64,000 nucleotides of DNA, from the IMG/VR virus record IMGVR_UViG_3300046694_000296, positions 62,001 to 126,000 of that record; one strand, written 5' to 3'. Shown piece after piece: positions 23,531 through 44,068 of the stretch. Position 1 is the stretch's first letter, and the number at the start of each line of letters is the position of its first letter. The position numbers and the translations under genes are program-made. The notes beneath the pieces are model-generated. The model was given only the letters and a program-made list of their open reading frames with translations, was not told the DNA's origin and did no database searches.

Positions 23531-24502
23531 ATGAAGCTGGCTAACGTAGGTAAGAAACTTTGGACAGATGGTGTGCCGAAGAGAGCACAACCGTTTCTCG
23601 CCGGGCTCGTCGTTATCGTGCTATGCGCTCAGCACTCGGACTCCATGGCCGCTCTGTGGGATTGGTATAAGTGCAATCGCGAACCGGTCATCTCCCTCGC
23701 AACTGGCATCGGTGGATTGTTTGCTATTTGGGTGGCCTTTGGTCAATTTCAGACCGCTAGGCTGCGGCATGAGGAGCAAACTCGGGCCGATCTTCAGCGC
23801 CGGATTACTGAGACCTTCATTAAGGCGACTGAGCAACTCGGAAGTGAAAAGATCGATGTTCGTCTAGGTGGCATCTATACACTGGAGCGCATCTCGAAGG
23901 AAAGTCCGGTGGACTACTGGCCCGTTATGGAAACGCTCTGCGCGTTCGTGCGCGGACGACCTCGGGCGAAAGAGCTGAAAGCCGGATCGGATTCGCTTTT
24001 ATACTCGGCCGCAGAAGGGCAGGATGACGCCGGAGGCTGTCCGACGGACATTCAAGCCGTGCTAACTGTGATTGGGCGGCGCCATGAAAAGAGCCGTGAG
24101 CACGAAAGGATGAGGGGTCGGCACATTGATCTCAGCTACGCAAACCTTCAGAAATCCAATCTAACATTTGCGCATCTCGAATGGGCTTTCATGGTCGGCG
24201 TGCATCTCGAAGGCGCGAATCTTATTCACGCAGGACTTGAGAACGCTGACATAAGCAATGGGCATCTTGAGCGCGCTTATCTCGTTGGGGCGGACCTTCG
24301 AAGGGCGAACCTCCGGTCGGCGAATTTCGAGGGTGCCAACCTTCAGGCGGCACGTATCGATTTGGCACAAGTCGCGGGCGCTGATCTCCGTTGCATGCAT
24401 CTTCCAGATCTCGAAGTTACTATGGGCGACGCTACGACCATACTTCCGGAAGGGTTGAGCGCCCCCGGTTCGTGGGTTCTACCCACTTCGGCGACGAAAT
24501 AA
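23531..24502 (+). CDS. Membrane-anchored pentapeptide-repeat protein
   Basis: Two N-terminal hydrophobic segments, EQLGS...VRLGGIYTLERI, DIQAVLTVIGRR, A(D/N)L repeats. Confidence 0.85.
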   Translation: MKLANVGKKLWTDGVPKRAQPFLAGLVVIVLCAQHSDSMAALWDWYKCNREPVISLATGIGGLFAIWVAFGQFQTARLRHEEQTRADLQRRITETFIKATEQLGSEKIDVRLGGIYTLERISKESPVDYWPVMETLCAFVRGRPRAKELKAGSDSLLYSAAEGQDDAGGCPTDIQAVLTVIGRRHEKSREHERMRGRHIDLSYANLQKSNLTFAHLEWAFMVGVHLEGANLIHAGLENADISNGHLERAYLVGADLRRANLRSANFEGANLQAARIDLAQVAGADLRCMHLPDLEVTMGDATTILPEGLSAPGSWVLPTSATK

Positions 24503-24921
24503 CCGGCTTTATTTCATGGTCGAGACAGCCACGAACAAGAGCCCGCGTAAGTCGTTGATAGTAAACACAAATCGCCTATTTCGGAGAGACACCCGGTTTC
24601 GCCACTATTGCAGAGCCAATACACCCGCTCAGAGAAAACGCTAAGCCCGGGCCAAGCCCCGCCTCGATTCGACAGAGAAGCAGATAGCCCCGCCCGCAAA
24701 CGAGACGAATGCCGAGCGATCTGACAAGCGCAACCGCATAGTCCAAAACACTGCATCGGGCGCAAACCCTTTTCCCAGTAGAGAAAAGAGGAAGAAAGTT
24801 GCTTTTGTCGAGAACGTCGAGGACGAAAAATCCGAGATAGAGGTCGCGGAAGAGAGAGTCGCAATCCGCACTCATACACATAGAGATTCCGGGAGAGACA
24901 CGCTCCACACACCCATCGCCT

Positions 24922-25308
24922 CTATAAGGTTCTTATACGGCTGGGTCCGATCTTTGTCTTTCAATCGTGCCTCGCCAGCAATTTCTTATACCGCGCCGCC
25001 AAGCACCAGCCACACTCATACCTGCCAACTCCCGCCAAAGCCTTGTCAGACAAGGGCCGTGGAGCTTTGAGATCCTTGGAATCGGTGCCGTGGAATGAGG
25101 ATGGCGAGCGGCCCGTATAGTCGATTTGGCTGATTCGCGAGGCCCGGCCCTATAAGAATTGGACGGCTCTTCCTATAAGTATCGCCAAGGCTACGTATAA
25201 GGTTCGGCCCTACGTATAAGAGTGCCCTATAAGTATCGGCGTGTCACGTATAAGAACGGCGCTCCGTGGCGGGCGCCTGTGTGGAAAGGCGTGCACGCGT
25301 CCTATAAG
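24922..25308. repeat. Array of (C/G)TATAAG motifs around a central palindrome
   Basis: TATAAG at 24923, 25151, 25174, 25196, 25215, 25228, 25249, 25303; inverted CTTATA at 24932, 24985; CCTTGTC-A-GACAAGG at 25041-25055. Confidence 0.8.
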
Positions 25309-25364
25309 TATCCAAGCCTTCGTCGAGAAAATGAAAGCTCACCAACAACGAAGCACACCACACC

Positions 25365-25631
25365 ATGCGAGACGCATTCGAAGCCAAATGGTTCGTCGGG
25401 GAGAAGTATCACCGCGCCGAGTTCGACACTGCCGCTGAAGCGATCGCCGCGATTGAAGCGAACGGGAAGGGCTCCATCACCAAGTTCTACGTGAGCGCCA
25501 ATCTCCCGGGCTGTTTGCCTGAAGAGGTGTATCGCTCGTCGGGACTCTGGAACTTCGAAGACGGGAAGTGGATGAGCGTCGCGATCTTCGGTGGTCCCGG
25601 GCCGGGCAAGTGGGAAGAGCGTCCTGAGTAA
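25365..25631 (+). CDS. Hypothetical protein
   Basis: 88 aa, A/C-rich leader, hairpin terminator at about 25639-25665. Confidence 0.7.
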   Translation: MRDAFEAKWFVGEKYHRAEFDTAAEAIAAIEANGKGSITKFYVSANLPGCLPEEVYRSSGLWNFEDGKWMSVAIFGGPGPGKWEERPE

Positions 25632-25696
25632 TGAGGTGACGGGCCAAGCGCCCGTCTTTCTTTCCCTGCTCGTTGCCTTGGCGGTCCGTGGATTGC

Positions 25697-26008
25697 CTAC
25701 TCCAATGACTTCAACGAACGCCACACGACGAAGATATAAATGACCGCAAAGGCAATGAAATCCTTCGTGGAGAGCACGTTCAGACGCACGGAAGAAGAGG
25801 CATCAGTATCTTCGATGAGCCACGGAGATGACTTAGAGAGCATCAGGACGCTCAGACCGGTGCCGACAACCGATGCGTGGAGCAAAGCCCACTTGGTCAA
25901 TCGAGCAAGCGTTATCCGGCGCTCGCGTTCGAGCAGCACAAGCTCAGTAACAAAGATGGCGAAGCCGATAAGTGTGGCGGCGATCGACAGATAGTCGAGC
26001 AACGTCAT
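25697..26008 (-). CDS. Small multi-pass membrane protein
   Basis: GGAGG RBS; three hydrophobic segments. Confidence 0.6.
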   Translation of the reverse strand: MTLLDYLSIAATLIGFAIFVTELVLLERERRITLARLTKWALLHASVVGTGLSVLMLSKSSPWLIEDTDASSSVRLNVLSTKDFIAFAVIYIFVVWRSLKSLE

Positions 26009-26167
26009 AGATGGCCCTCCAGGTGCGGGCAGTGTATCCGAGGACCGAAAGCAGCCTGGGTTACCACGGCCAGGTGAAATCACACGGCCAAGTTAGGGCA
26101 AACGCATCCGGGTGTCATCCAAAGCCTCGTCGGGAGACTGAAGTCTCTCCCATCAACGAGGTGTCCC

Positions 26168-26344
26168 ATGTTCGAACAGTTGCAGTGGTTCTTTGCCGTG
26201 CTGCTGGTGATTCTTGCCGCGGTCGTGATCGGTGCTGCGGGCTGGTTGCTGATCGACGTGCTCACGGGCGGACTCAAGCGCACCGCCCGGGTGCGTCGCT
26301 GTGCGATGCCCAAGCGTATCGCCAACCTGATGCGGGGTCACTGA
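26168..26344 (+). CDS. Small single-pass membrane protein (absent from ORF track)
   Basis: GAGGT RBS; MFEQLQWFFAVLLVILAAVVIGAAGWLLI plus basic tail, 58 aa. Confidence 0.6.
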   Translation: MFEQLQWFFAVLLVILAAVVIGAAGWLLIDVLTGGLKRTARVRRCAMPKRIANLMRGH

Positions 26345-26826
26345 GATGCCAGCAACCACTCACTACGCGGCCGGCTCGCTGCGCACGTTCATCGAACGCG
26401 CTGTCTATCTGGGTGCACGCTCGGCTGGGGCGTCGCCGCGCGATGCATACCGCATGGCTCGACAAACCCAGCGGGTCGAAGAGCGTCGCGCGCGTCGGGT
26501 CTAGGCGAGGTTTACTTCGGGGAAAGTCAAGAGCATCCGACAAAGAGAGGGTGCTTTTGCTCCTCTGCCGAACATATGTTGCGCCACGGCAACATCTTTA
26601 TTACAAAAATACACATTCTAGACGGACAAAACATTGCTCAACTATGGTTGATCCGTGCAAACCCTTATCACGCAAGCAATCGGAAATGTTTACCAATCGG
26701 TAACAATGAAACCTGATCTGTTGGATACGTTTCATTTTTGACACAATATTAAACATGCGCTGGACACACCACTACGGCGCACCCCACGGATGAGTTCACC
26801 AAAAAGAATCTGGAGTCGGTCAGGCA

Positions 26827-27225
26827 ATGAGCAAGATCACGTTTGAGTGTTTGGACCAGAATGGTCAGATGTTCACGGTGTCGATGGTGGCGAACACCGA
26901 GGCGATAGAGACGGTCATCGCCAATACTGTGCAAGCCTACCAACGCAGTGGGATCGAGGTCATCTCGGCCACGCGCGTTGAGGAGCTGGTAGTCGATGTG
27001 AATTTGTATGCGCCGGCGCCGCGCCGCGAGAACGTGTCAAGCTCGGCCCTGCAGTGGCTCGCCGGCAGGGGCGGCAAGATCATGCAGGGTGGCGCGGCCT
27101 TCGGGGCGCTGGCGCTCTCCGTGATCGGCTTTGATGACGGGTTTTCCATCCTGTCGTTCTCGCACCATCTCACGCTGCTCGCCGAGGCGGTGCCCAGCCT
27201 TATGCACATGATCCACTTGGCCTGA
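26827..27225 (+). CDS. Hypothetical protein with C-terminal hydrophobic segment
   Basis: 132 aa. Confidence 0.65.
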   Translation: MSKITFECLDQNGQMFTVSMVANTEAIETVIANTVQAYQRSGIEVISATRVEELVVDVNLYAPAPRRENVSSSALQWLAGRGGKIMQGGAAFGALALSVIGFDDGFSILSFSHHLTLLAEAVPSLMHMIHLA

Positions 27226-27301
27226 CGAATCCGCGGAAGTCAAATCCGAAAAGGGCACTCTACACTGGTGAATCTTTCATCAGCTACGGGTGCCCTTTCC
27301 T

Positions 27302-27466
27302 ATGATGTCGTTGTTCAGCGAAGGCATGTGGATGATCCCGCTCTACGGGCTCGTGTTCATCCTGTTCGTGCTTGCAATCGCCCTTGCGGAAGCGTTCTTC
27401 GACGCCCGTAAACACCGCCGATACATCGCGAGCGTGCGGCGCTACCACGCGCGTCGCAGGTTCTAG
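27302..27466 (+). CDS. Small single-pass membrane protein with Arg-rich tail (absent from ORF track)
   Basis: MMSLFSEGMWMIPLYGLVFILFVLAIALA...RRYHARRRF, 54 aa. Confidence 0.55.
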   Translation: MMSLFSEGMWMIPLYGLVFILFVLAIALAEAFFDARKHRRYIASVRRYHARRRF

Positions 27467-27613
27467 CAGCTCCTCCACCCGGTGCCCATGCGCACCGTCA
27501 CGGCATAGCCTTGGCGCGTCTCACACGCATCCAAGCGCGCTCCGACACCCGCTCGACAAAATGACGTCTCTCGCAGCAAACGACTTGCTGCCCACCTATT
27601 CAAGGAGACTGTC

Positions 27614-27781
27614 ATGCACGCCCGCCTCATCCACGTTGAAACGCTGCTCGCCGATAACGAGCTCGACCGCGAGCTGGATGAGCTGGAGATGATGCAGGAG
27701 CAGGAAGAGCAGCGTGCCGCCCGCGCTACCCGTGGGACGCGCCGCCGCCCGTATTCGACCGAGCGCGCACGGATCGACTAA
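27614..27781 (+). CDS. Small hypothetical protein (absent from ORF track)
   Basis: AAGGAG RBS; acidic middle, basic end; 55 aa. Confidence 0.6.
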   Translation: MHARLIHVETLLADNELDRELDELEMMQEQEEQRAARATRGTRRRPYSTERARID

Positions 27782-27845
27782 AATTGCCGTTGTAGTTCTG
27801 TTTTACCTGAGTGATAGTCGAGCCGTCAAACAGCAAGACATCTTG

Positions 27846-27872
27846 GCGGCACCTTCGGGTGCCGCTCTTTTT
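27846..27872 (+). terminator. Intrinsic terminator
   Basis: GCGGCACC-TTCG-GGTGCCGC then TCTTTTT. Confidence 0.8.
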
Positions 27873-28114
27873 CCCGCCGACGCGCGAGGGCTGGCGAGCA
27901 TCCAGGTAAGCACGCCTTGGCACCCGGCAGCACACCGAGGCCCGGGCTTTAGGATTCTACGAGCCCGTGCCGCGGCTGGGCCAAAACGAGGGCCAGGTAA
28001 GGGCGGCTTGGACGGGAAAGGGCAGGGCGCGCCGGGCCGGGGCCGTCCACAAGAGCCAGCGCCAAAGCGCTCAGGGCCGCACAACAACGTCAGGGCCACA
28101 GACGATCAGAGCCA

Positions 28115-28193
28115 CGTATCAATATGTTAGAACTTCGTATCAATAGTGTTAGAGATACGATGTATCGCATCGCGTATCAATTCTGTTAGAACT
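28115..28193 (+). repeat. Three ~20-bp direct repeats (iteron-like)
   Basis: CGTATCAATATGTTAGAACT 28115, CGTATCAATAGTGTTAGAGAT 28136, CGTATCAATTCTGTTAGAACT 28173. Confidence 0.8.
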
Positions 28194-28336
28194 ACCATTG
28201 ATAACAGCGACGCACCGGGCGCCCCATAATAACCAGAACCGGGCGCGCACGCGTCTACCAGATGGTCCCGGGCGTCGTCAAGCGGTCCTAGTAAATACAA
28301 CGTCAACAAATTTCTAACTTTTTTTCGACAAACCTG

Positions 28337-28365
28337 TTGCAGCAAGTAACCCGTTACTTTAAGAT
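28337..28365 (+). promoter_or_regulatory. Sigma70-type promoter with palindromic operator in the spacer
   Basis: TTGCAG-17bp-TAAGAT; spacer holds AAGTAACCCGTTACTT (28344-28359). Confidence 0.75.
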
Positions 28366-28424
28366 TCTCTTACCGGTTCAGCGAAACCGGGCAAACAAAC
28401 CAATCACTCAATAGGTAAATCAAA

Positions 28425-29099
28425 ATGACGAATGCAGCTAAAGAACAAGTTATCACCCTCGAAAACGTGTTTATCGCTATCAACCGCGCGAATGACCGTT
28501 ACAACGCAAAGACGGGCAGCGCTCACATGCAAGACGACCTGAAGAAAGCGCGCGGTTACTGGGACGAAGCGCTGTGCACGTTCGTTGCGGGCATGCTGAA
28601 CCGGGCGCGTATCGATCAAGTCGAATTTCTCGCGACCATCGCAGATAACATGCCCGTCAAAGCGGTAATGCGCGCTAGTGAGTTTTTCGCATGCTTGCAT
28701 GCAAAGAACTATCGTCAACTCGACGGTGTTACTGCGCTGTCGATTCTTAGCGCAGTGCATGCGGGCGCAGTGTCGCGTAGTGCGGTTTTCTTTGCTGCAA
28801 CCGGTCGCGGGAATGAATCGACGTCAGATGTGGTTAGCGATATTTCGCTGGTTCGCAAGCTTCAACGTGCGCTGGGTAAGACTGTGGGCGCAACGACCGA
28901 AAGCACGCAGAATTCCCGCTCTTTCGGGACTAACGGGTTTTGCAAGTATCTGCGCATGGGTGAAATGGTCAAAGCAAAGGGCGCAGAAGCACAGTTGACC
29001 GTCAACGCTAAATCCCCCTTTGTCGCTGCAATTGCAAAGATGGTAGAGCAAGCAAGCGAAGACACCCTCTCGTTGGTTAAGGGCGCGAAGAAAGAGTAA
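28425..29099 (+). CDS. Hypothetical protein
   Basis: 224 aa; more A/T-ending codons than flanking genes. Confidence 0.8.
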   Translation: MTNAAKEQVITLENVFIAINRANDRYNAKTGSAHMQDDLKKARGYWDEALCTFVAGMLNRARIDQVEFLATIADNMPVKAVMRASEFFACLHAKNYRQLDGVTALSILSAVHAGAVSRSAVFFAATGRGNESTSDVVSDISLVRKLQRALGKTVGATTESTQNSRSFGTNGFCKYLRMGEMVKAKGAEAQLTVNAKSPFVAAIAKMVEQASEDTLSLVKGAKKE

Positions 29100-29166
29100 G
29101 TAACGCGTTACGCTACCGGGCGCACACTGCGCCCGGTTCAATCAAACCATTCTCCCGATTAGCACC

Positions 29167-29442
29167 ATGCAAACGACCCAATACGCCCGCGTTTCTGTTG
29201 TCGATTACAACGAGCAAGACGACACCTTGCTTTGTGACGTTGTGATTGGTCGCGACACTCTCGCCCAATCAATCGACATTCCCGCAAGCGCTTTCTATCA
29301 AGCGTTTTCGACGCAAGACGCACAAGACGCGCGCACGGTTGCGCTCGGTGCTTTGTATGACGCGCATTTTGATGCATGCCCGCGCGACCTTGTGGGCGCG
29401 TCTTGTGTCGCAGAGTATCGCGCGCACTTGCTCGCACAGTAA
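29167..29442 (+). CDS. Hypothetical protein
   Basis: 91 aa after hairpin 29115-29137. Confidence 0.65.
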   Translation: MQTTQYARVSVVDYNEQDDTLLCDVVIGRDTLAQSIDIPASAFYQAFSTQDAQDARTVALGALYDAHFDACPRDLVGASCVAEYRAHLLAQ

Positions 29443-29506
29443 CGCACCTAGCGGGCGCACTGTGCGCCCGCTACATATTGCCCGCACCCTTTCCCTATCC
29501 CGCACC

Positions 29507-29719
29507 ATGAAAACCGCTCAAAACGTCTCTACTGCCCGCGTCTCTGCTTTCGCATACCATGCGCGTGCACAGCACGGGTATCACGCACAGCAAGACGCAC
29601 AAGACGCGAACCGCTATACCATCGCGCGCGGTTCGTGCGACGCTGATTCATTCGATACTATGACAGACGCACTCTCTCACTTCAGTCTCTCGATTGATTG
29701 GGAAAGCGAACCAATCTAA
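29507..29719 (+). CDS. Hypothetical protein
   Basis: 70 aa after hairpin 29449-29473. Confidence 0.55.
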   Translation: MKTAQNVSTARVSAFAYHARAQHGYHAQQDAQDANRYTIARGSCDADSFDTMTDALSHFSLSIDWESEPI

Positions 29720-29927
29720 TACATAGCAAACCGAACTATCGCGCGCCCGGGCACCCTCGCACCGGGCGATGAATCGTAACGCTTGGGGCACCTTCATGGT
29801 CTTAGAAGGAATCGCGATAGTGGTGGGGCCTCGTTGGAAATTTTTTCCAGATCCAGACCCGATCCTTATACGGCCAGGCGGTGGCAAATCCGAGATCCTT
29901 ATAGGGCCGAGCGGGGCCTTGGAAATC

Positions 29928-29974
29928 GGGGAGAGGGAAAGCGGGGGAGTGGGGAGTGGGGCTTGGGGAAGGGG
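29928..29974 (+). other. G-tract cluster (potential G-quadruplex)
   Basis: GGGG-AGA-GGG-AAAGC-GGGGG-AGT-GGGG-AGT-GGGG-CTT-GGGG-AA-GGGG in an intergenic region. Confidence 0.6.
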
Positions 29975-30112
29975 AAGTTGGACTTGGACGAGCTGGCAGA
30001 TCGGAAAGGGGCAGGCCGGCGGCGCTAGGGGCGCTGGCGCGCCCCGCGCGACCCCGTCCTCGCCGATACTGAGCGTTACAATCGCATCACTGATCGATCT
30101 GGCGAGGCTCTC

Positions 30113-37252: not shown

Positions 37253-37313
37253 TTCTTGCCTTATAGGAGGTCCGTAAGTATAGTAACGAATGACTTACTC
37301 ACACGGACGCATT

Positions 37314-37976
37314 ATGTCAGCCGCACAACCCAAGTTCCAGCCGGTGTCAGCGCAGGTATCAGTCGATATGCTGCGGGCGAACAGCTGGAACACCAACACG
37401 ATGTCGCCGGATTCGGAAGCCAAGCTCGACGTCTCCGTATCCCGGTTCGGCCTCTACAAGCCGATCGTGGTGCGCCCGCACCCGGACGGCGAGGGCTACG
37501 AGATTCTCGGCGGTCAGCATCGGTGGGAGGCAGCGCGGCGCGCTGGCATGTCCGAAGTGCTGATCGTCAACGTCGGGCCGGTGAGCGATCTGACGGCCAA
37601 GGAAATTGGCCTCGTCGACAACGGCCGCTACGGCGAAGACGACACGCTCGCGCTCTCGCGCCTGTTGAAGGAGATGGGCGTCGAGGACATCGGCACCTTC
37701 CTTCCCTACACCGACAGCGAGCTGGAGAACATTCTCGCAGCTTCAAGTATAGATCTCGACGACCTTGACAAGCTGGATCAGGCCGAGATGCCTGACCTCT
37801 CCGGCGCGGGGCTTGGCGCCACGCATCAGGTGATGCGCTTCAAGGTGCCCGTCGAGGACGTCGCCTGGGTCACGAGCGCGATTGAGCGCCGCCAGCGCGA
37901 GCAGGGATTCACCACCGAAGACTCCATGACGAACGCCGGCATGGCCTTCGTCGATCTCATGAAGGCATACAAGTGA
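37314..37976 (+). CDS. ParB/Sulfiredoxin N-terminal-domain protein 1
   Basis: N.N.M...L..S...FG...PIVVR...YEILGGQHRW; no obvious HTH. Confidence 0.88.
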   Translation: MSAAQPKFQPVSAQVSVDMLRANSWNTNTMSPDSEAKLDVSVSRFGLYKPIVVRPHPDGEGYEILGGQHRWEAARRAGMSEVLIVNVGPVSDLTAKEIGLVDNGRYGEDDTLALSRLLKEMGVEDIGTFLPYTDSELENILAASSIDLDDLDKLDQAEMPDLSGAGLGATHQVMRFKVPVEDVAWVTSAIERRQREQGFTTEDSMTNAGMAFVDLMKAYK

Positions 37977-38248
37977 GCAAACCGACCGGCTTTGCGCGCA
38001 TCCCACGCTCCGAGTTCCTCTACCCGGAGTGTCAGAGCTGCTACTTCCACAACGTCGAGCCTGCCATCTGCGAGAACTGTGACAACGGTTCCGAATACGA
38101 GCCCGATGACGATCTCGAGGGCAAGCTCTCCGCGCGCCGCGCCGCCATCGTGCGATTTTTCCGCAAGATCCAGACACCCCTGCCGGCCGAGCTGATCCCC
38201 GAGGAGCTCGAGCCCGCGACTGAAGAACAGGAGCTTCAAGCAGCATGA
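37973..38248 (+). CDS. Small Cys-rich protein
   Basis: CQSC...CENC; acidic tail; GTGA overlap. Confidence 0.7.
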   Translation: MSKPTGFARIPRSEFLYPECQSCYFHNVEPAICENCDNGSEYEPDDDLEGKLSARRAAIVRFFRKIQTPLPAELIPEELEPATEEQELQAA

Positions 38249-38463
38249 GCAAACAGAGCGAAGCCAAGGCCGCGCAGCACTACAACCGCGAGCCGGTGAA
38301 CTGCGGCAACTGCCGCCATTTCGAGTTCGACGAAATCACCCACAAGGGCGCCTTCGGCGGTGGCACCTACGTCGAGCAGAAGAGCCTGCGTTGCGGCATC
38401 GGCAGGTTCAAGGTCCACAAGACCGCCAGCTGCGTGCGCTTCGAGCGCCCGGAGGCCGCATGA
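38245..38463 (+). CDS. Small Cys-rich protein (possible Fe-S or Zn binding)
   Basis: CGNC.HF...C...C..F; ATGA overlaps. Confidence 0.7.
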   Translation: MSKQSEAKAAQHYNREPVNCGNCRHFEFDEITHKGAFGGGTYVEQKSLRCGIGRFKVHKTASCVRFERPEAA

Positions 38464-39101
38464 GCGTCACCCGCACCAACGAGATTCGCGCCGTTGCCGA
38501 TCTCGTGCCCTACGCGAAGAACGTCAAGAAGCACGACGACGCGCAGGTCGCCAAGATCATCGAGTCGATCCAGCAGTTCGGCTGGACCCAGCCCATCGTC
38601 ATCGACGAGGCGAACGTCATCATCGCCGGCCACGGCCGGCGCCTGGCGGCGACCAAGCTCTCCATGACGCAGGTGCCGGTGCTCGTGCTGCGCGGCCTGA
38701 CGGACGGGCAGAAGCGGGCGCTGCGCCTGGCCGACAACCGCACGAACGAGGGCGGCATCGACACGCTGATGTTCCGCGAAGAGATTCTCGGCATCGAGGA
38801 GCTGCTCACCGGCATCTACGACGTGAAGGAGCTCGAGTTCTCCACCGCGGACCTGGGCGAGCTGAACGACGCGGCCTTCGTGCCGGACGTCGCTGAAGCC
38901 GTCGAAATGCAGGAGCAGGCGGCCCACGCGAAGGCAGACGAGGTGACCGCGCGCCGCGTGCCGCTCTCGAAGGCGTTCGGCTTCAAGGACGTCGCCGGCA
39001 GCCACGAGATCCACATCTCGCGCTTCATGGCGCGCGCGGCCGCTGAAACCGGGTTGACGGGCGCCGACGCGCTCGCGGCTTTTCTCGAAACGCTGGCATA
39101 A
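38460..39101 (+). CDS. ParB N-terminal-domain protein 2
   Basis: LVPYAKN..KH...Q...I..SI..FGW..PIVID...IIAGHGR..AA...LADN. Confidence 0.9.
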   Translation: MSVTRTNEIRAVADLVPYAKNVKKHDDAQVAKIIESIQQFGWTQPIVIDEANVIIAGHGRRLAATKLSMTQVPVLVLRGLTDGQKRALRLADNRTNEGGIDTLMFREEILGIEELLTGIYDVKELEFSTADLGELNDAAFVPDVAEAVEMQEQAAHAKADEVTARRVPLSKAFGFKDVAGSHEIHISRFMARAAAETGLTGADALAAFLETLA

Positions 39102-39118
39102 GTCACCCATTACTCACC

Positions 39119-39835
39119 ATGACAACCTACACCATCGACAAGCGCTTCCACACCCGTGTCGCGCGCAGCCAGCGCGTCGTGGAAGTCGCTGAAGCGTTCG
39201 GGCTCGGCCTGGACGACAAGGAATTCGTGATCTTCGACCAGCTCAAGCTGGACGTGGCGCAGGGCGACGTGCTCTACATCACGGGCCAGTCGGGCTCCGG
39301 CAAGTCGCTGCTGCTGCGCGAGCTCTCGGCGCAGATGGCTGCCGAAGGGCAGAAGGTCGCCAACCTCGACGAGGTGGCGATCAACGCGGAGCTGCCGCTC
39401 ATCGACCAGATCGGCACCAGCACGAACGACGCGATCCGGCTGCTCTCGATTGCCGGCCTGAACGACGCGTATCTGTTCATCCGCAAGCCCGGCGAGCTCT
39501 CTGACGGCCAGCGCTACCGCTTCAAGCTCGCGAAAGCCATCGAGAGCCAGGCCGACGTCTGGGTCGCCGACGAGTTCATGGCGGTGCTCGACCGGACCGC
39601 GGCCAAGGTGATCGCGTATGCCGTGCAGAAGACCGCGCGCAAGGTCAACGCGACCGTGATCGTCGCAACCACCCACCTCGATCTCGTGGAAGACCTGCAG
39701 CCGTCGCTCTACATCGAAAAGCGCTACCGCGAAAAGCTGCGCATCGAAGCATTCACCGACCTCAACGCGGCGGCCGAGGGCTCGAAGACCCTCACACGCG
39801 ACGAGGCTTTCGATCTCATGAAAAGGATGGCCTGA
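39119..39835 (+). CDS. Soluble ABC-family ATPase
   Basis: GQSGSGKS, LSDGQRYR signature, VADEF Walker B, ATTH H-loop; no permease nearby. Confidence 0.92.
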   Translation: MTTYTIDKRFHTRVARSQRVVEVAEAFGLGLDDKEFVIFDQLKLDVAQGDVLYITGQSGSGKSLLLRELSAQMAAEGQKVANLDEVAINAELPLIDQIGTSTNDAIRLLSIAGLNDAYLFIRKPGELSDGQRYRFKLAKAIESQADVWVADEFMAVLDRTAAKVIAYAVQKTARKVNATVIVATTHLDLVEDLQPSLYIEKRYREKLRIEAFTDLNAAAEGSKTLTRDEAFDLMKRMA

Positions 39836-42102: not shown

Positions 42103-42117
42103 GCCTGAGAGCCAGTG

Positions 42118-42795
42118 ATGACGGATACGACGACCGAGCCGAAAAAGACCGGCGGCCGCAAGCCCGGTAGCCGCTCGCTTTCGGAGAAGCAAAAAGCCGA
42201 AGCCTGCGCGCTCTACGCTGCGGGCGAACTCACGATCGAGCAGCTTGCCGAGCGCTACAAGCGCACCCCGCGCGCGATGAGCGCGATGTTCGCGAAGGCG
42301 GGCGTAAAGAAGGGCGACAAGCGCGCCGAAGTGCAAGCTGCGGTCACACAGCAGGTCAACCAGCAGATCGCGGGTGACGCGGGCGTGATCGCGGGCAAGA
42401 TCAAAGAGACGAAGGACTCGCACTACGCGGCGGCGAAGGTCATCGCGGGCCTGATCCAGAAGCAGCTCGTCACGGCGCAGCAAAACGGCAAGGGGTTCGC
42501 GATCGTCCAGAACGAGATCAAGACGCTCAAGCTCGCGGCCGAGGCATTGGCGACCCTGCGCGCCGAGCGCTTCGTGATTCTCGGCATCGCCGACGGCGAG
42601 AAGGACGACAACGACGAGCTGCCGGATCTGGGCGTGCACGAGATGACCGCCGAGCAGATCGCCGAGATGCAAGCGCGCCAGGACGACGGCGGCCTCGACA
42701 TGAGCGCCGACGAAGAGGCGATGGCAATGGCGATCGCGCCGCCGGGCAACGACGACAACGTGATCGACATCGAGGACGGCGATGCAGCTGCGTGA
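42118..42795 (+). CDS. terS: Terminase small subunit
   Basis: N-terminal HTH (TIEQLAERYKRTPRAMS), acidic tail, overlaps terL. Confidence 0.7.
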   Translation: MTDTTTEPKKTGGRKPGSRSLSEKQKAEACALYAAGELTIEQLAERYKRTPRAMSAMFAKAGVKKGDKRAEVQAAVTQQVNQQIAGDAGVIAGKIKETKDSHYAAAKVIAGLIQKQLVTAQQNGKGFAIVQNEIKTLKLAAEALATLRAERFVILGIADGEKDDNDELPDLGVHEMTAEQIAEMQARQDDGGLDMSADEEAMAMAIAPPGNDDNVIDIEDGDAAA

Positions 42796-44068
42796 GCCGG
42801 GGCTGCCCGGCATTACGCCGATCGCAGCCGAGATGCAGACGCTTTTCCTCCATCCGAAGCAGATGGAGGTGTTTCGCTCGCCGCATCGCTTTCGCGTGGT
42901 CACGGCGGGCCGACGCTGGGGCAAAACTCAGCTCGCCAAGGTGGCGCTCATCAAATACGCGAAGGTGAAGAACCGGCTCGTGTGGTATGTGGCGCCGTCC
43001 TACCGGATGGCAAAGCAGATCATGTGGCCGGACCTCATCGCCGCGATCCCGCGCAAGTGGGTCAAGAAGATCAACGAGACGACGCTCGCCGTCACGCTCG
43101 TGAACAACACCCGGATTGAGCTGAAGGGCGCCGACAACCCCGACTCGCTGCGTGGCGTGGGTGTGCACTTTCTCGTCATGGACGAGGTGCAGGACATCAA
43201 CCCGGAAGCGTGGACCAAGGTGCTGCGCCCGACCCTCGCATCGACCGGCGGCCACGCGCTCTTTATCGGCACGCCCAAGTCATACAACTTCCTGTATGAC
43301 CTGCACATGCTCGGCCAGGACCCGAAGAACCAGATCCTCGGTCGCTGGAAGAGCTGGCAGTTCCCGACGATCACCTCGCCCTTCATTCCGAAGTCGGAGA
43401 TCGAGGCCGCACGCGCGGACATGGACGAGAAATCGTTCAAGCAAGAATTCGAGGCATCGTTCGAGACGATGAGCGGGCGCGTGTATCACGCCTTCGATCG
43501 CAAGGTGCACACGGGCGACTATCCGTTCAACCCGAGCCTGCCGATCTGGGTGGGGCAGGACTTTAACATCGACCCGATGAGCTCCTGCATCTTGCAGCCG
43601 CAGGAGAACGGCGAGGTGTGGGCGATCCACGAGCTGAGCCTGAAGAGCTCCAACACCGAGGAGGTGTGCGACGAGCTCGAGCGCCTCTACTGGAAGCTCA
43701 TCAAGCGCGTGACGATCTTCCCCGACCCAGCCGGCGGCTACCGCCAGCACGCGCGCGGCGAGTCGGACGTGGACATCTTCAAGCAGAAGGGGTTCGAGAA
43801 CGTCGTCTACCGGAAGAAACACCCGCCTGTGGCCGACCGGATCAACGCGGTGAACCGCATGCTGCGCTCAGCCGACGGGCGCGTGCGCCTGAAGGTCGAC
43901 AAGCGCTGCAAGGAAGTCATCAAGGCGCTGGAGCAGACGATCTACAAGGAAGGCGGGCGCGAGGTCGACAAGGACATGGGCGTCGAGCACATGGGCGACG
44001 CACTCGGCTACCCGGTCGAGTATATGTTCCCGGTGCGCGAAATCAGCATTGCAGGCGTGTCCATTTGA
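42782..44068 (+). CDS. terL: Terminase large subunit (alternative start 42833)
   Basis: AGRRWGKT Walker A, LRG, VMDEV Walker B, GQDFNIDP nuclease motif, H.GDALGY. Confidence 0.95.
   Translation: MQLREPGLPGITPIAAEMQTLFLHPKQMEVFRSPHRFRVVTAGRRWGKTQLAKVALIKYAKVKNRLVWYVAPSYRMAKQIMWPDLIAAIPRKWVKKINETTLAVTLVNNTRIELKGADNPDSLRGVGVHFLVMDEVQDINPEAWTKVLRPTLASTGGHALFIGTPKSYNFLYDLHMLGQDPKNQILGRWKSWQFPTITSPFIPKSEIEAARADMDEKSFKQEFEASFETMSGRVYHAFDRKVHTGDYPFNPSLPIWVGQDFNIDPMSSCILQPQENGEVWAIHELSLKSSNTEEVCDELERLYWKLIKRVTIFPDPAGGYRQHARGESDVDIFKQKGFENVVYRKKHPPVADRINAVNRMLRSADGRVRLKVDKRCKEVIKALEQTIYKEGGREVDKDMGVEHMGDALGYPVEYMFPVREISIAGVSI

What the first reader, a model, noticed from the sequence alone, without database searches (positions are those of the whole stretch)
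24503..25364. 860-bp non-coding block with a TATAAG array arranged around a palindrome
Seen: seven direct (C/G)TATAAG copies in 25151-25308 with spacings 23, 22, 19, 13, 21, 54 (mostly about two helical turns), two inverted copies at 24932 and 24985, a CTATAAGGTTCTTATAC dyad at 24922, and CCTTGTC-A-GACAAGG at 25041 between the two orientations. Two more inverted copies with matching flanks (GATCCTTATACGGCC 29861, GATCCTTATAGGGCC 29894) lie 4.6 kb away. Inference: phased protein-binding array such as a centromere, origin, packaging or recombination site.
Basis: partly seen in the sequence, partly recalled or inferred. Interest (0 to 1): 0.6.

Follow-up and report, generated by a model that had tools for sequence, protein, structure and literature searches.

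The report
Phased TATAAG boxes flanking early genes
A conserved row of short TATAAG boxes, spaced in whole turns of the DNA helix, sits at one edge of a phage-plasmid's early-gene block with a mirrored pair at the other edge; these edges probably mark the virus's long terminal repeat, so the boxes are most likely a protein docking site for cutting and packaging the DNA, or else for switching on the early genes.

Summary
(C/G)TATAAG occurs 19 times in the window against 1.8 expected, with seven direct copies at 25150-25308 and an inverted pair at 29865/29898.

- **Source record:** a chimeric join of two collinear ~108-kb relatives, about 80% identical. The second half carries the same array and pair, with boxes kept and spacers diverged.
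- **Relatives:** IMG/VR relatives down to about 47% helicase identity have the same layout, with arrays and a tandem pair facing each other 2.5-4.8 kb apart. Box spacing is quantised at about 10.5-11 bp.
- **Not conserved:** the dyad at 24922 and the palindrome at 25041.
- **Lifestyle:** this is a phage-plasmid. A Rep_3 initiator, its own 20-bp iterons and ParA lie about 48 kb away, so plasmid origin and centromere are unlikely.
- **Terminal repeat:** published repeat sizes for relatives B1VFA and V1VFA-S fit only one place, from inside the syntenic non-coding block to just past the early genes.

Best reading (about 0.4): phased protein-binding sites marking the terminal-repeat edges for terminus formation and packaging. 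Main rival (about 0.3): control region of the early operon.

The parts
24496..24515 (.). Palindrome GAAATAAC-N4-(G/T)TTATTTC overlapping the stop codon of the upstream gene. It marks the left limit of the non-coding block.
   Evidence: The arms are conserved in sequence in five relatives while the 4-5 nt centre varies.
24555..24582 (+). Promoter-like pair TTGATA-N16-TATTTC. Function not shown.
   Evidence: Both hexamers are conserved in 4-5 relatives and the spacer is variable. It was not picked up by the sigma-70 consensus scan.
24583..24905 (+). T-poor, purine- and C/A-rich spacer. It includes the conserved 32-mer at 24695-24726.
   Evidence: AT skew is 0.33-0.53. The same composition occurs in the syntenic blocks of L061, RHph_N1_15, nickie and B1VFA. 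Fold z-score is only -1.8 and there is no Rfam match.
24922..24991 (.). Conserved facing pair of boxes, 24922-24928 (+) and 24985-24991 (-), around TTGTCTTTCAATCG (24954-24967).
   Evidence: Five-way alignment. A +/- spacing of 62 bp recurs in six distinct contexts.
24992..25149 (.). Predicted zone of the left terminal-repeat boundary. It holds a C-rich stretch, CCGTGG boxes (25057, 25088), the conserved GGATGGCGAG..GGCCCGTATAG (25099-25120), and the non-conserved palindrome 25041-25055.
   Evidence: Synteny with the B1VFA left-end interval 39,631-39,809, which shares the GCGCCGCGCC / CCRYGG context. This is an inference, not a measurement.
25150..25254 (+). Main array: six direct (C/G)TATAAG boxes starting at 25150, 25173, 25195, 25214, 25227 and 25248.
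   Evidence: Cores are invariant and spacers variable in relatives. One relative has an extra 22-bp unit.
25264..25308 (+). CCGTGG box, conserved TGTGTGGAAAG, and the last box (25302-25308). The last box has conserved flanks and lies 56 nt before the first early gene.
   Evidence: Conserved in A, B and G004. The leader is 56-64 nt in A, B and L061.
25365..29719 (+). Early-type operon of small ORFs with no family matches. It is the proposed body of the long terminal repeat. The first gene (25365-25631) is followed by a terminator-like hairpin at 25638-25656.
   Evidence: No Pfam or PHROG hits. Third-codon-position substitution pattern in the A/B comparison supports + strand genes at 26168-26344, 26827-27225, 27290-27466, 27614-27781, 28425-29099 and about 29508-29719. 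Terminator scan.
29744..29769 (.). GC-rich hairpin just after the last early gene.
   Evidence: Present with different sequences, so compensated, in six relatives. Terminator-like on the minus strand.
29799..29828 (-). Unique element CCCCACCA-N15-TCTAAGAC. It is either a promoter-like -35/-10 pair or a terminus site.
   Evidence: Occurs once per genome half. Both blocks are invariant, with fixed spacing and a variable spacer, in six relatives. A TCTAAGAC / TG.TGGGG counterpart lies in the B1VFA right-end interval.
29865..29904 (-). Tandem pair of boxes, 33 bp apart, pointing leftwards into the early segment.
   Evidence: Conserved as a pair or trio with 33-37 bp spacing in relatives. The outer copy is a 16/18 inverted match of the first array box.
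29912..29982 (+). G-run purine tract just outside the pair.
   Evidence: An equivalent tract occurs in half B and in L061.
42115..42795 (+). Candidate small terminase: N-terminal helix-turn-helix, coiled middle, acidic tail, directly before the putative large terminase gene (window 42782-44068, assigned by size and synteny with annotated relatives; its own sequence was not scanned). It is a candidate binder of the boxes; binding was not tested.
   Evidence: Translation. Gene order matches BUCTxx99 (terminase family protein with an unannotated upstream gene) and B1VFA, where the syntenic gene before the large terminase is annotated as an HTH protein. Homologues found in relatives.

Best explanation
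The TATAAG boxes are binding sites for one sequence-specific protein, laid out on one face of the helix. They mark the two edges of the ~4.7-kb early-gene segment.

In this phage-plasmid family that segment is most probably the long direct terminal repeat of the virion DNA.
- The seven-box array points inwards from just inside the left boundary.
- The tandem pair points inwards at the right boundary.

Proposed mechanism: an oligomeric DNA-binding protein, with the small terminase as the leading candidate, assembles on the phased boxes. It positions the nuclease and packaging motor so that cuts fall at fixed sites on either side of the repeat. This resembles cosB or pac arrays next to a cut site.

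The last box, 56 nt before the first early gene, may also serve early transcription.

What is shown: the boxes are real, conserved, phased and restricted to this region. What is inferred: that the edges are the repeat boundaries, which protein binds, and what it does.
For: **Enrichment**
- 19 boxes against 1.8 expected in the window.

**Conservation**
- The same arrangement occurs in the second genome half.
- It also occurs in relatives down to about 47% helicase identity.

**Restriction to this region**
- In five complete relatives the boxes are confined to 5-10 kb beside the helicase gene. Arrays and pair face each other.
- The rest of those genomes holds roughly as many as a reversed-motif control: about 6-11 stray copies against whole-genome control totals of 1-14.

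**Phasing**
- Spacings cluster at 12-13, 21-23, 32-36 and 53-55 bp. The best period is 10.5-10.75 bp, with vector strength 0.45 over 163 spacings.

**Terminal repeats in the family**
- B1VFA has fixed termini with a 3,605-bp repeat; V1VFA-S has a 3,939-bp repeat (PMC12509600).
- Nican01 is classed as 'DTR (long)' (PMC11256456).
- Genome-wide, a 3,605-bp stretch of B1VFA corresponds to 3,939 +/- 5 bp of V1VFA-S at only one place. It runs from inside the syntenic 1.5-kb non-coding block to the gap after the last small early gene.

**Symmetry and right-edge element**
- The outer boxes on the two sides are a 16/18 inverted match.
- A unique, family-wide element lies at the right edge and falls in the B1VFA right-end interval.

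**Other roles are filled elsewhere**
- The plasmid origin and partition functions lie elsewhere.
Against: **No direct end mapping**
- The runs holding this phage are kept as contigs only. They show no ends and no usable depth step.

**Limits of the boundary inference**
- It rests on two distant relatives that carry other repeat motifs (CCWAGG, AGCTA), not TATAAG.
- It fits to within 1 bp, not exactly.
- The V1VFA-S repeat size came from coverage, not from mapped ends.

**Features that fit a transcription role**
- The array lies 17 kb from the terminase genes.
- The box looks like a -10 promoter element.
- All array boxes point the way the early genes run.
- The last box sits at a fixed distance from the first gene.

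**Binder unknown**
- Nothing ties the small terminase to the boxes. Its sequence pattern across lineages follows phylogeny only.
Confidence: 0.4

Rival explanations
1. Control region of the early operon. The boxes are operator or promoter-type sites. They would be bound cooperatively by a repressor that silences lytic early genes in the plasmid-prophage state, by an activator, or by RNA polymerase carrying the phage's sigma-like factor.

The last box would act as the -10 of the rightward early promoter. The pair would lie upstream of a leftward promoter (CCCCACCA-N15-TCTAAGAC).
For: **Promoter-like features of the boxes**
- The box resembles the -10 consensus.
- All array boxes point the way the early genes run.
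- The last box has conserved flanks and a fixed 56-64 nt leader.

**Operon context**
- The downstream genes are small family-less ORFs that vary between strains, as in host-takeover operons.

**Leftward element**
- It has promoter architecture: two invariant blocks, fixed spacing and a variable spacer.

**Sigma-like protein**
- A sigma-like 212-aa protein is encoded. It scores 20-22 bits against Sigma70_r2 and E 8.5e-5 against the PHROG sigma factor family.
- The syntenic B1VFA gene is annotated as a sigma-70 family protein.

**Lifestyle**
- A temperate phage-plasmid needs tight repression of its early genes.
Against: **Poor fit to independent promoters**
- There is no -35 element upstream of the boxes. 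The final G replaces the most conserved -10 base.
- Sigma-70-type promoters are not enriched in the region.
- Spacings of 12-23 bp with helical phasing do not fit independent promoters.

**No candidate binder**
- No repressor candidate lies next to the array.
- The first gene after the array is not conserved.

**Other points**
- The box is kept over deep divergence, which is unusual for immunity operators.
- Boxes near the helicase start are explained by its ribosome-binding site and by the ParB-operon promoter, so they do not show a regulon.
- No RNA data could be obtained.
Confidence: 0.3
2. Lytic replication origin. The boxes would be iteron-like sites for a phage initiator that loads the phage's DnaB-like helicase. 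The distant pair would act as a second cis site, as in P4 ori/crr. Alternatively, transcription from the edge promoter would prime replication through an R-loop.
For: - A 22-bp spacing is the classic iteron spacing. In some relatives the unit is a composite of about 22 bp, CCATGG plus the box.
- The phage has its own replisome: Pol III alpha, DnaB-like helicase, primase, gp32-like protein, RecA-like protein and a UvsW-like helicase. No lytic origin has been assigned.
- Purine-rich and G-run tracts flank the elements.
Against: - There are no DnaA boxes and no AT-rich unwinding stretch. The lowest GC content is 0.46.
- No initiator gene lies adjacent.
- The cores are only 7 bp long.
- The only recognisable initiator (Rep_3) has its own distinct iterons elsewhere.
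Confidence: 0.12
3. Plasmid centromere or plasmid origin of the prophage state, bound by the ParB-N proteins or by the partner of ParA.
For: - Phased direct repeats resemble type Ib/II centromeres.
- Two ParB_N proteins lie 12 kb away.
- The element is a phage-plasmid.
Against: - Rep_3, nine ~20-bp repeats (TGGGAGGAWTTCCGG type) and ParA with a 123-aa partner form a compact module at genome 37.9-40.3 kb. That is about 48 kb from the array.
- The ParB_N genes head the terminase operon, as in many phages.
- Plasmid modules differ between family members (RepC or Rep_3), whereas the non-coding block lies in the conserved phage part.
Confidence: 0.04
4. Recombination sites for inversion or excision of the 4.7-kb segment.
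For: Inverted 16/18 match of the outer boxes.
Against: - No recombinase gene lies in or beside the segment.
- Contigs of four metagenomes show only strain-variant skips and no strand-switch joints.
- The orientation is the same in all relatives.
Confidence: 0.03

Closest known systems
Terminase-binding repeat arrays beside a cut site: lambda cosB R sites, P1 pac hexamers, SPP1 pacL/pacR (from established knowledge, not tested here)
   Same: Several short, phased, oriented repeats lie within a few hundred bp of a DNA end, on the side that is packaged. They serve as a platform for an oligomeric small terminase.
   Different: - Here the ends are long direct repeats of several kb, not cohesive or headful ends.
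- The array is 17 kb from the terminase genes.
- A second, inverted set sits at the other repeat boundary.
- No binding and no end has been measured.
Short-repeat arrays next to the terminal repetition of T7 (SRL/SRR) and the repeat-rich non-coding zone of the T5 terminal repeat
   Same: - Arrays of 7-8 bp repeats lie at irregular but short spacing, directly beside a direct terminal repeat.
- The terminal repeat carries the first-expressed genes (T5, SPO1).
   Different: - There is no sequence or gene relationship: this family uses a Pol III alpha replisome and is a phage-plasmid.
- The function of the T7 and T5 repeats is itself not settled.
Iterons of Rep_3-type plasmid origins, and P4 ori/crr
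   Same: - About 22-bp spacing, with direct and inverted copies.
- Two clusters about 4.5 kb apart, as in P4.
   Different: - The cores are 7 bp rather than 17-22 bp.
- There is no adjacent initiator, no DnaA boxes and no AT-rich stretch.
- The record's Rep_3 has separate iterons elsewhere.
Repeat-array centromeres and operators bound by small dimeric proteins (R1 parC, omega heptads of pSM19035)
   Same: Short asymmetric repeats occur in direct and inverted arrangement upstream of an operon, bound cooperatively.
   Different: - The array is not next to a partition operon.
- The repeats are spaced by one to three helical turns rather than being contiguous.
- The first downstream gene is not a conserved DNA-binding protein.

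Membership tests
Iteron-type plasmid origin (Rep_3) | Initiator gene adjacent to the repeats | tested here: not met
   Rep_3 (E 5.8e-34) lies at genome 37969-38712, about 48 kb from the array. It sits beside its own ~20-bp repeats at 38708-39140.
Iteron-type plasmid origin (Rep_3) | DnaA boxes and an AT-rich unwinding element beside the repeats | tested here: not met
   There is no DnaA box, even with one mismatch, in 24503-25364. The lowest GC content in 80-bp windows is 0.46.
Partition centromere (type Ia parS / type Ib-II repeat arrays) | Site next to, or inside, the parA/parB or parM/parR operon | tested here: not met
   ParA and its 123-aa partner lie at genome 39176-40254. The ParB_N genes (window 37290-39101) head the terminase operon 12 kb from the array.
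Partition centromere (type Ia parS / type Ib-II repeat arrays) | Binding by the centromere-binding protein and plasmid stabilisation | not testable with these tools
   Needs EMSA or ChIP and stability assays.
Terminase recognition site (cos/pac-type) | Lies at or beside a physical end of virion DNA | tested here: inconclusive
   No end mapping was possible for this phage, because the runs are held as contigs only. In the relatives B1VFA and V1VFA-S, the published repeat lengths fit only boundaries inside the syntenic block and just past the early genes.
Terminase recognition site (cos/pac-type) | Bound by the small terminase; needed for cutting and packaging | not testable with these tools
   A candidate small terminase with an N-terminal HTH exists. 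No binding data exist.
Sigma-70-type promoters | -35 and -10 hexamers 16-18 bp apart, with T at the last -10 position | tested here: not met
   The 45 nt upstream of 605 boxes from relatives show no conservation, and the box ends in G. The consensus scan shows no enrichment: 6 found against 5.7 expected.
Site-specific inversion or excision cassette | Recombinase gene plus inverted or direct crossover sites; alternative junctions in DNA | tested here: not met
   No recombinase family hit lies in or beside the segment. Contigs of four runs show no strand-switch joints.
Known RNA families (Rfam) | Covariance-model match | tested here: not met
   Nothing at gathering score in the window. Within 24400-30100 there are only two sub-threshold chance-level hits, both outside the non-coding elements.

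The most novel reading that the evidence does not exclude
One protein reads inward-facing TATAAG boxes at both edges of a multi-kilobase segment and so defines where a long direct terminal repeat begins and ends. In the linear virion the same protein would sit at both DNA ends. There it could also pair the two repeats for circularisation into the plasmid prophage.

This would be a dedicated boundary-marking system for long terminal repeats in a phage-plasmid family, with lineage-specific box sequences (TATAAG, CCWAGG, GCTGAAC, ATAGAGA).
Probability: 0.25. Interest if true: 0.7.

Novelty: new variant of a known kind. Interest (0 to 1): 0.5.

Why it matters
How phages with long direct terminal repeats (T5, SPO1 and this family) fix the two repeat boundaries is poorly understood. 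For this widespread soil and rhizosphere phage-plasmid family (RHEph10, nickie, B1VFA and many metagenomic relatives), no cis-acting site has been described in the papers I could find.

A conserved, phased, lineage-variable box array gives concrete mutable targets and short probes for three kinds of experiment:
- end-mapping;
- terminase or regulator binding;
- early-promoter studies.

It also separates the phage-mode cis elements from the plasmid-mode ones (the Rep_3 iterons and ParA module), which helps in dissecting the lysis-versus-plasmid decision.

Tried and rejected
- **DNA similarity searches.** The block found nothing in the phage collection or the plasmid collection.
- **RNA.** There are no tRNAs and no Rfam families. 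The T-poor left part folds only marginally better than shuffles.
- **Reads.** The 24 runs holding the stretch are rhizosphere metagenomes kept as contigs only. Neither ends nor expression could be read. Depth inside the segment was 1.0-1.7 times that of the flanks, but it is one figure per contig and mixes strains, so I do not use it.
- **Physical ends from contig ends.** Fragmentary relatives gave no consistent picture. GenBank records of relatives do not start at the block. The Nican01 paper gives the class 'DTR (long)' but no coordinates.
- **A regulon read-out from boxes in the helicase/ParB intergenic region (26 of 32 relatives).** Rejected as evidence. These boxes overlap the helicase ribosome-binding site (TAAGG, 6-7 nt, ATG) and the ParB-operon promoter TTGCCT-17-TATAGT.
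- **Small-terminase helix-turn-helix versus box type across lineages.** The pattern follows phylogeny and does not discriminate.
- **RepC.** Absent here. A repressor-type HTH_3 gave only one weak hit, in half B.
- **Literature.** Searches for TATAAG in phage promoters returned nothing relevant.

Full report
**1. What the window is**

The window is bases 62,001-126,000 of a single 215,656-bp IMG/VR virus record.
- A self-comparison shows two collinear genomes of about 108 kb joined head to tail. They are about 72-89% identical, segment by segment.
- Relatives in IMG/VR and GenBank are 105-122 kb.
- The record is therefore a chimeric concatenation of two co-occurring strains, 'A' (1-108.9 kb) and 'B'. 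The finding lies in A.
- The DNA occurs in many rhizosphere metagenomes.

Gene content places it with Rhizobium phages RHEph10, RHph_N1_15 and B1VFA, Pseudomonas phage nickie, and Stenotrophomonas and Xanthomonas phages.
- **Window and upstream loci:** a UvsW-like helicase, two ParB_N proteins and an ATPase lie ahead of the putative terminase, portal and capsid genes (these three assigned by size and synteny with annotated relatives).
- **Replication and nucleotide metabolism:** Pol III alpha, gp32-like, RecA-like, SbcCD-like, RNR, ThyX, ligases, DnaB-like helicase and primase.
- **Lifestyle:** published work treats this family as phage-plasmids (PMC7969092, PMC4447125, PMC12509600).
- **Plasmid module:** half A carries a Rep_3 initiator beside nine ~20-bp repeats, a ParA with a small partner, and ParE- and YoeB-type toxins.

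**2. The observation**

- (C/G)TATAAG occurs 19 times against 1.8 expected.
- Ten copies lie in 24922-25308 and two at 29865/29898.
- The 860-bp block is non-coding.

Half B has the same layout: a block, seven boxes and a pair 4.8 kb away. The cores are kept and the spacers diverged. A B-like IMG/VR genome has one extra 22-bp unit.

**3. Conservation in relatives**

I fetched 80 helicase-anchored loci from IMG/VR.
- TATAAG is about three times as frequent there as related hexamers.
- Many relatives with only 46-55% helicase identity carry arrays of up to nine boxes and a tandem pair or trio with 33-37 bp spacing.
- In five complete relatives the boxes are confined to 5-10 kb beside the helicase, with arrays and pair facing each other. 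Elsewhere the counts roughly match a reversed-motif control: about 6-11 stray copies against whole-genome control totals of 1-14.
- AT-rich and more distant lineages lack TATAAG enrichment. They still have the syntenic non-coding block of 0.7-1.5 kb, with other short repeats:
  - GCTGAAC/GGTTCAG in BUCTxx99;
  - TTGACA, ATAGAGA and CCATGG in RHph_N1_15;
  - ATAGAGA and CCGCGG in nickie;
  - CCWAGG and AGCTA in B1VFA.

A five-way alignment separates conserved parts from incidental ones.
- **Conserved:** the palindrome at 24496-24515, TTGATA..TATTTC, a 32-mer at 24695-24726, the facing boxes 24922(+)/24985(-) around TTGTCTTTCAATCG, CCGTGG boxes, a 22-mer at 25099-25120, the array, and the last box with its flanks.

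**4. Phasing**

I measured 163 non-identical same-orientation neighbour spacings of 9-60 bp.
- Peaks lie at 12-13, 21-23, 32-36 and 53-55 bp. Troughs lie at 17-18, 26-29 and 41-50 bp.
- The best period is 10.5-10.75 bp (vector strength 0.45).
- Relatedness of the sequences inflates any p-value, but the pattern holds across deeply diverged arrays.

This is the signature of sites kept on one face of the helix for cooperative protein binding. There is no conserved -35 upstream, and the box ends in G.

**5. Surroundings**

- **Downstream genes.** Rightwards from the array run small + strand genes without family matches. Several differ between A and B. Codon-position substitution patterns confirm the + strand genes and show that 29725-29910 is conserved but non-coding.
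- **Right-edge non-coding zone.** It holds four elements:
  - a hairpin;
  - a unique element CCCCACCA-N15-TCTAAGAC on the minus strand, with invariant blocks, fixed spacing and a variable spacer;
  - the pair;
  - a G-run tract.
- **Outer boxes.** The two outermost boxes are a 16/18 inverted match.

**6. The terminal-repeat link**

- Nican01 (Nickievirus) is classed 'DTR (long)'.
- B1VFA has fixed termini with a 3,605-bp repeat, and V1VFA-S has a repeat of 3,939 bp. Coordinates were not published.

I rebuilt both genomes from the records and mapped one onto the other.
- **Unique fit.** Only one place lets a 3,605-bp stretch of B1VFA correspond to 3,939 +/- 5 bp of V1VFA-S. The left end falls at 39,631-39,809 and the right end at 43,235-43,413, with a fit within 1 bp.
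- **Loose tolerance.** At +/- 10 bp a second, unrelated interval appears.
- **Left interval.** It lies inside the syntenic 1.5-kb non-coding block, 525-700 bp before the first early gene. Its GCGCCGCGCC / CCRYGG context matches window 24,990-25,150.
- **Right interval.** It lies in the gap after the last small early gene and contains the counterpart of the TCTAAGAC element.

So the early segment is very probably the long terminal repeat in this family. The TATAAG array would begin within about 170 bp of its left boundary, and the pair would sit at its right boundary. This is an inference by synteny. No reads could be laid for this phage beyond contigs.

**7. Weighing the functions**

- **Plasmid origin and centromere:** disfavoured, because that module sits elsewhere.
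- **Classical origin:** disfavoured by the lack of DnaA boxes, of an AT-rich stretch and of an adjacent initiator.
- **Inversion or excision:** no recombinase and no alternative joints.
- **Terminus and packaging recognition versus early-operon control:** these two remain.
  - For packaging: placement at both inferred repeat edges, inward symmetry, phasing, and the strong precedent of repeat arrays next to terminase cut sites.
  - For transcription: likeness to a -10 element, co-orientation with the early genes, the fixed leader after the last box, the promoter-like unique element, and a sigma-like gene.
  - Boxes near the helicase start do not help either way.

I put terminus and packaging at about 0.4, transcription control at about 0.3, a lytic origin at about 0.12, and the rest below 0.05 each. 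The two leading models are not exclusive.

**8. Novelty**

Phased repeat arrays at phage termini and control regions are a known kind of element. This box, its two-edge inverted layout around a multi-kilobase early segment, and its lineage-specific replacement by other short repeats are not described in the papers I could find on this family. It is best called a new variant of a known kind, of moderate interest until the ends and the binding protein are determined.

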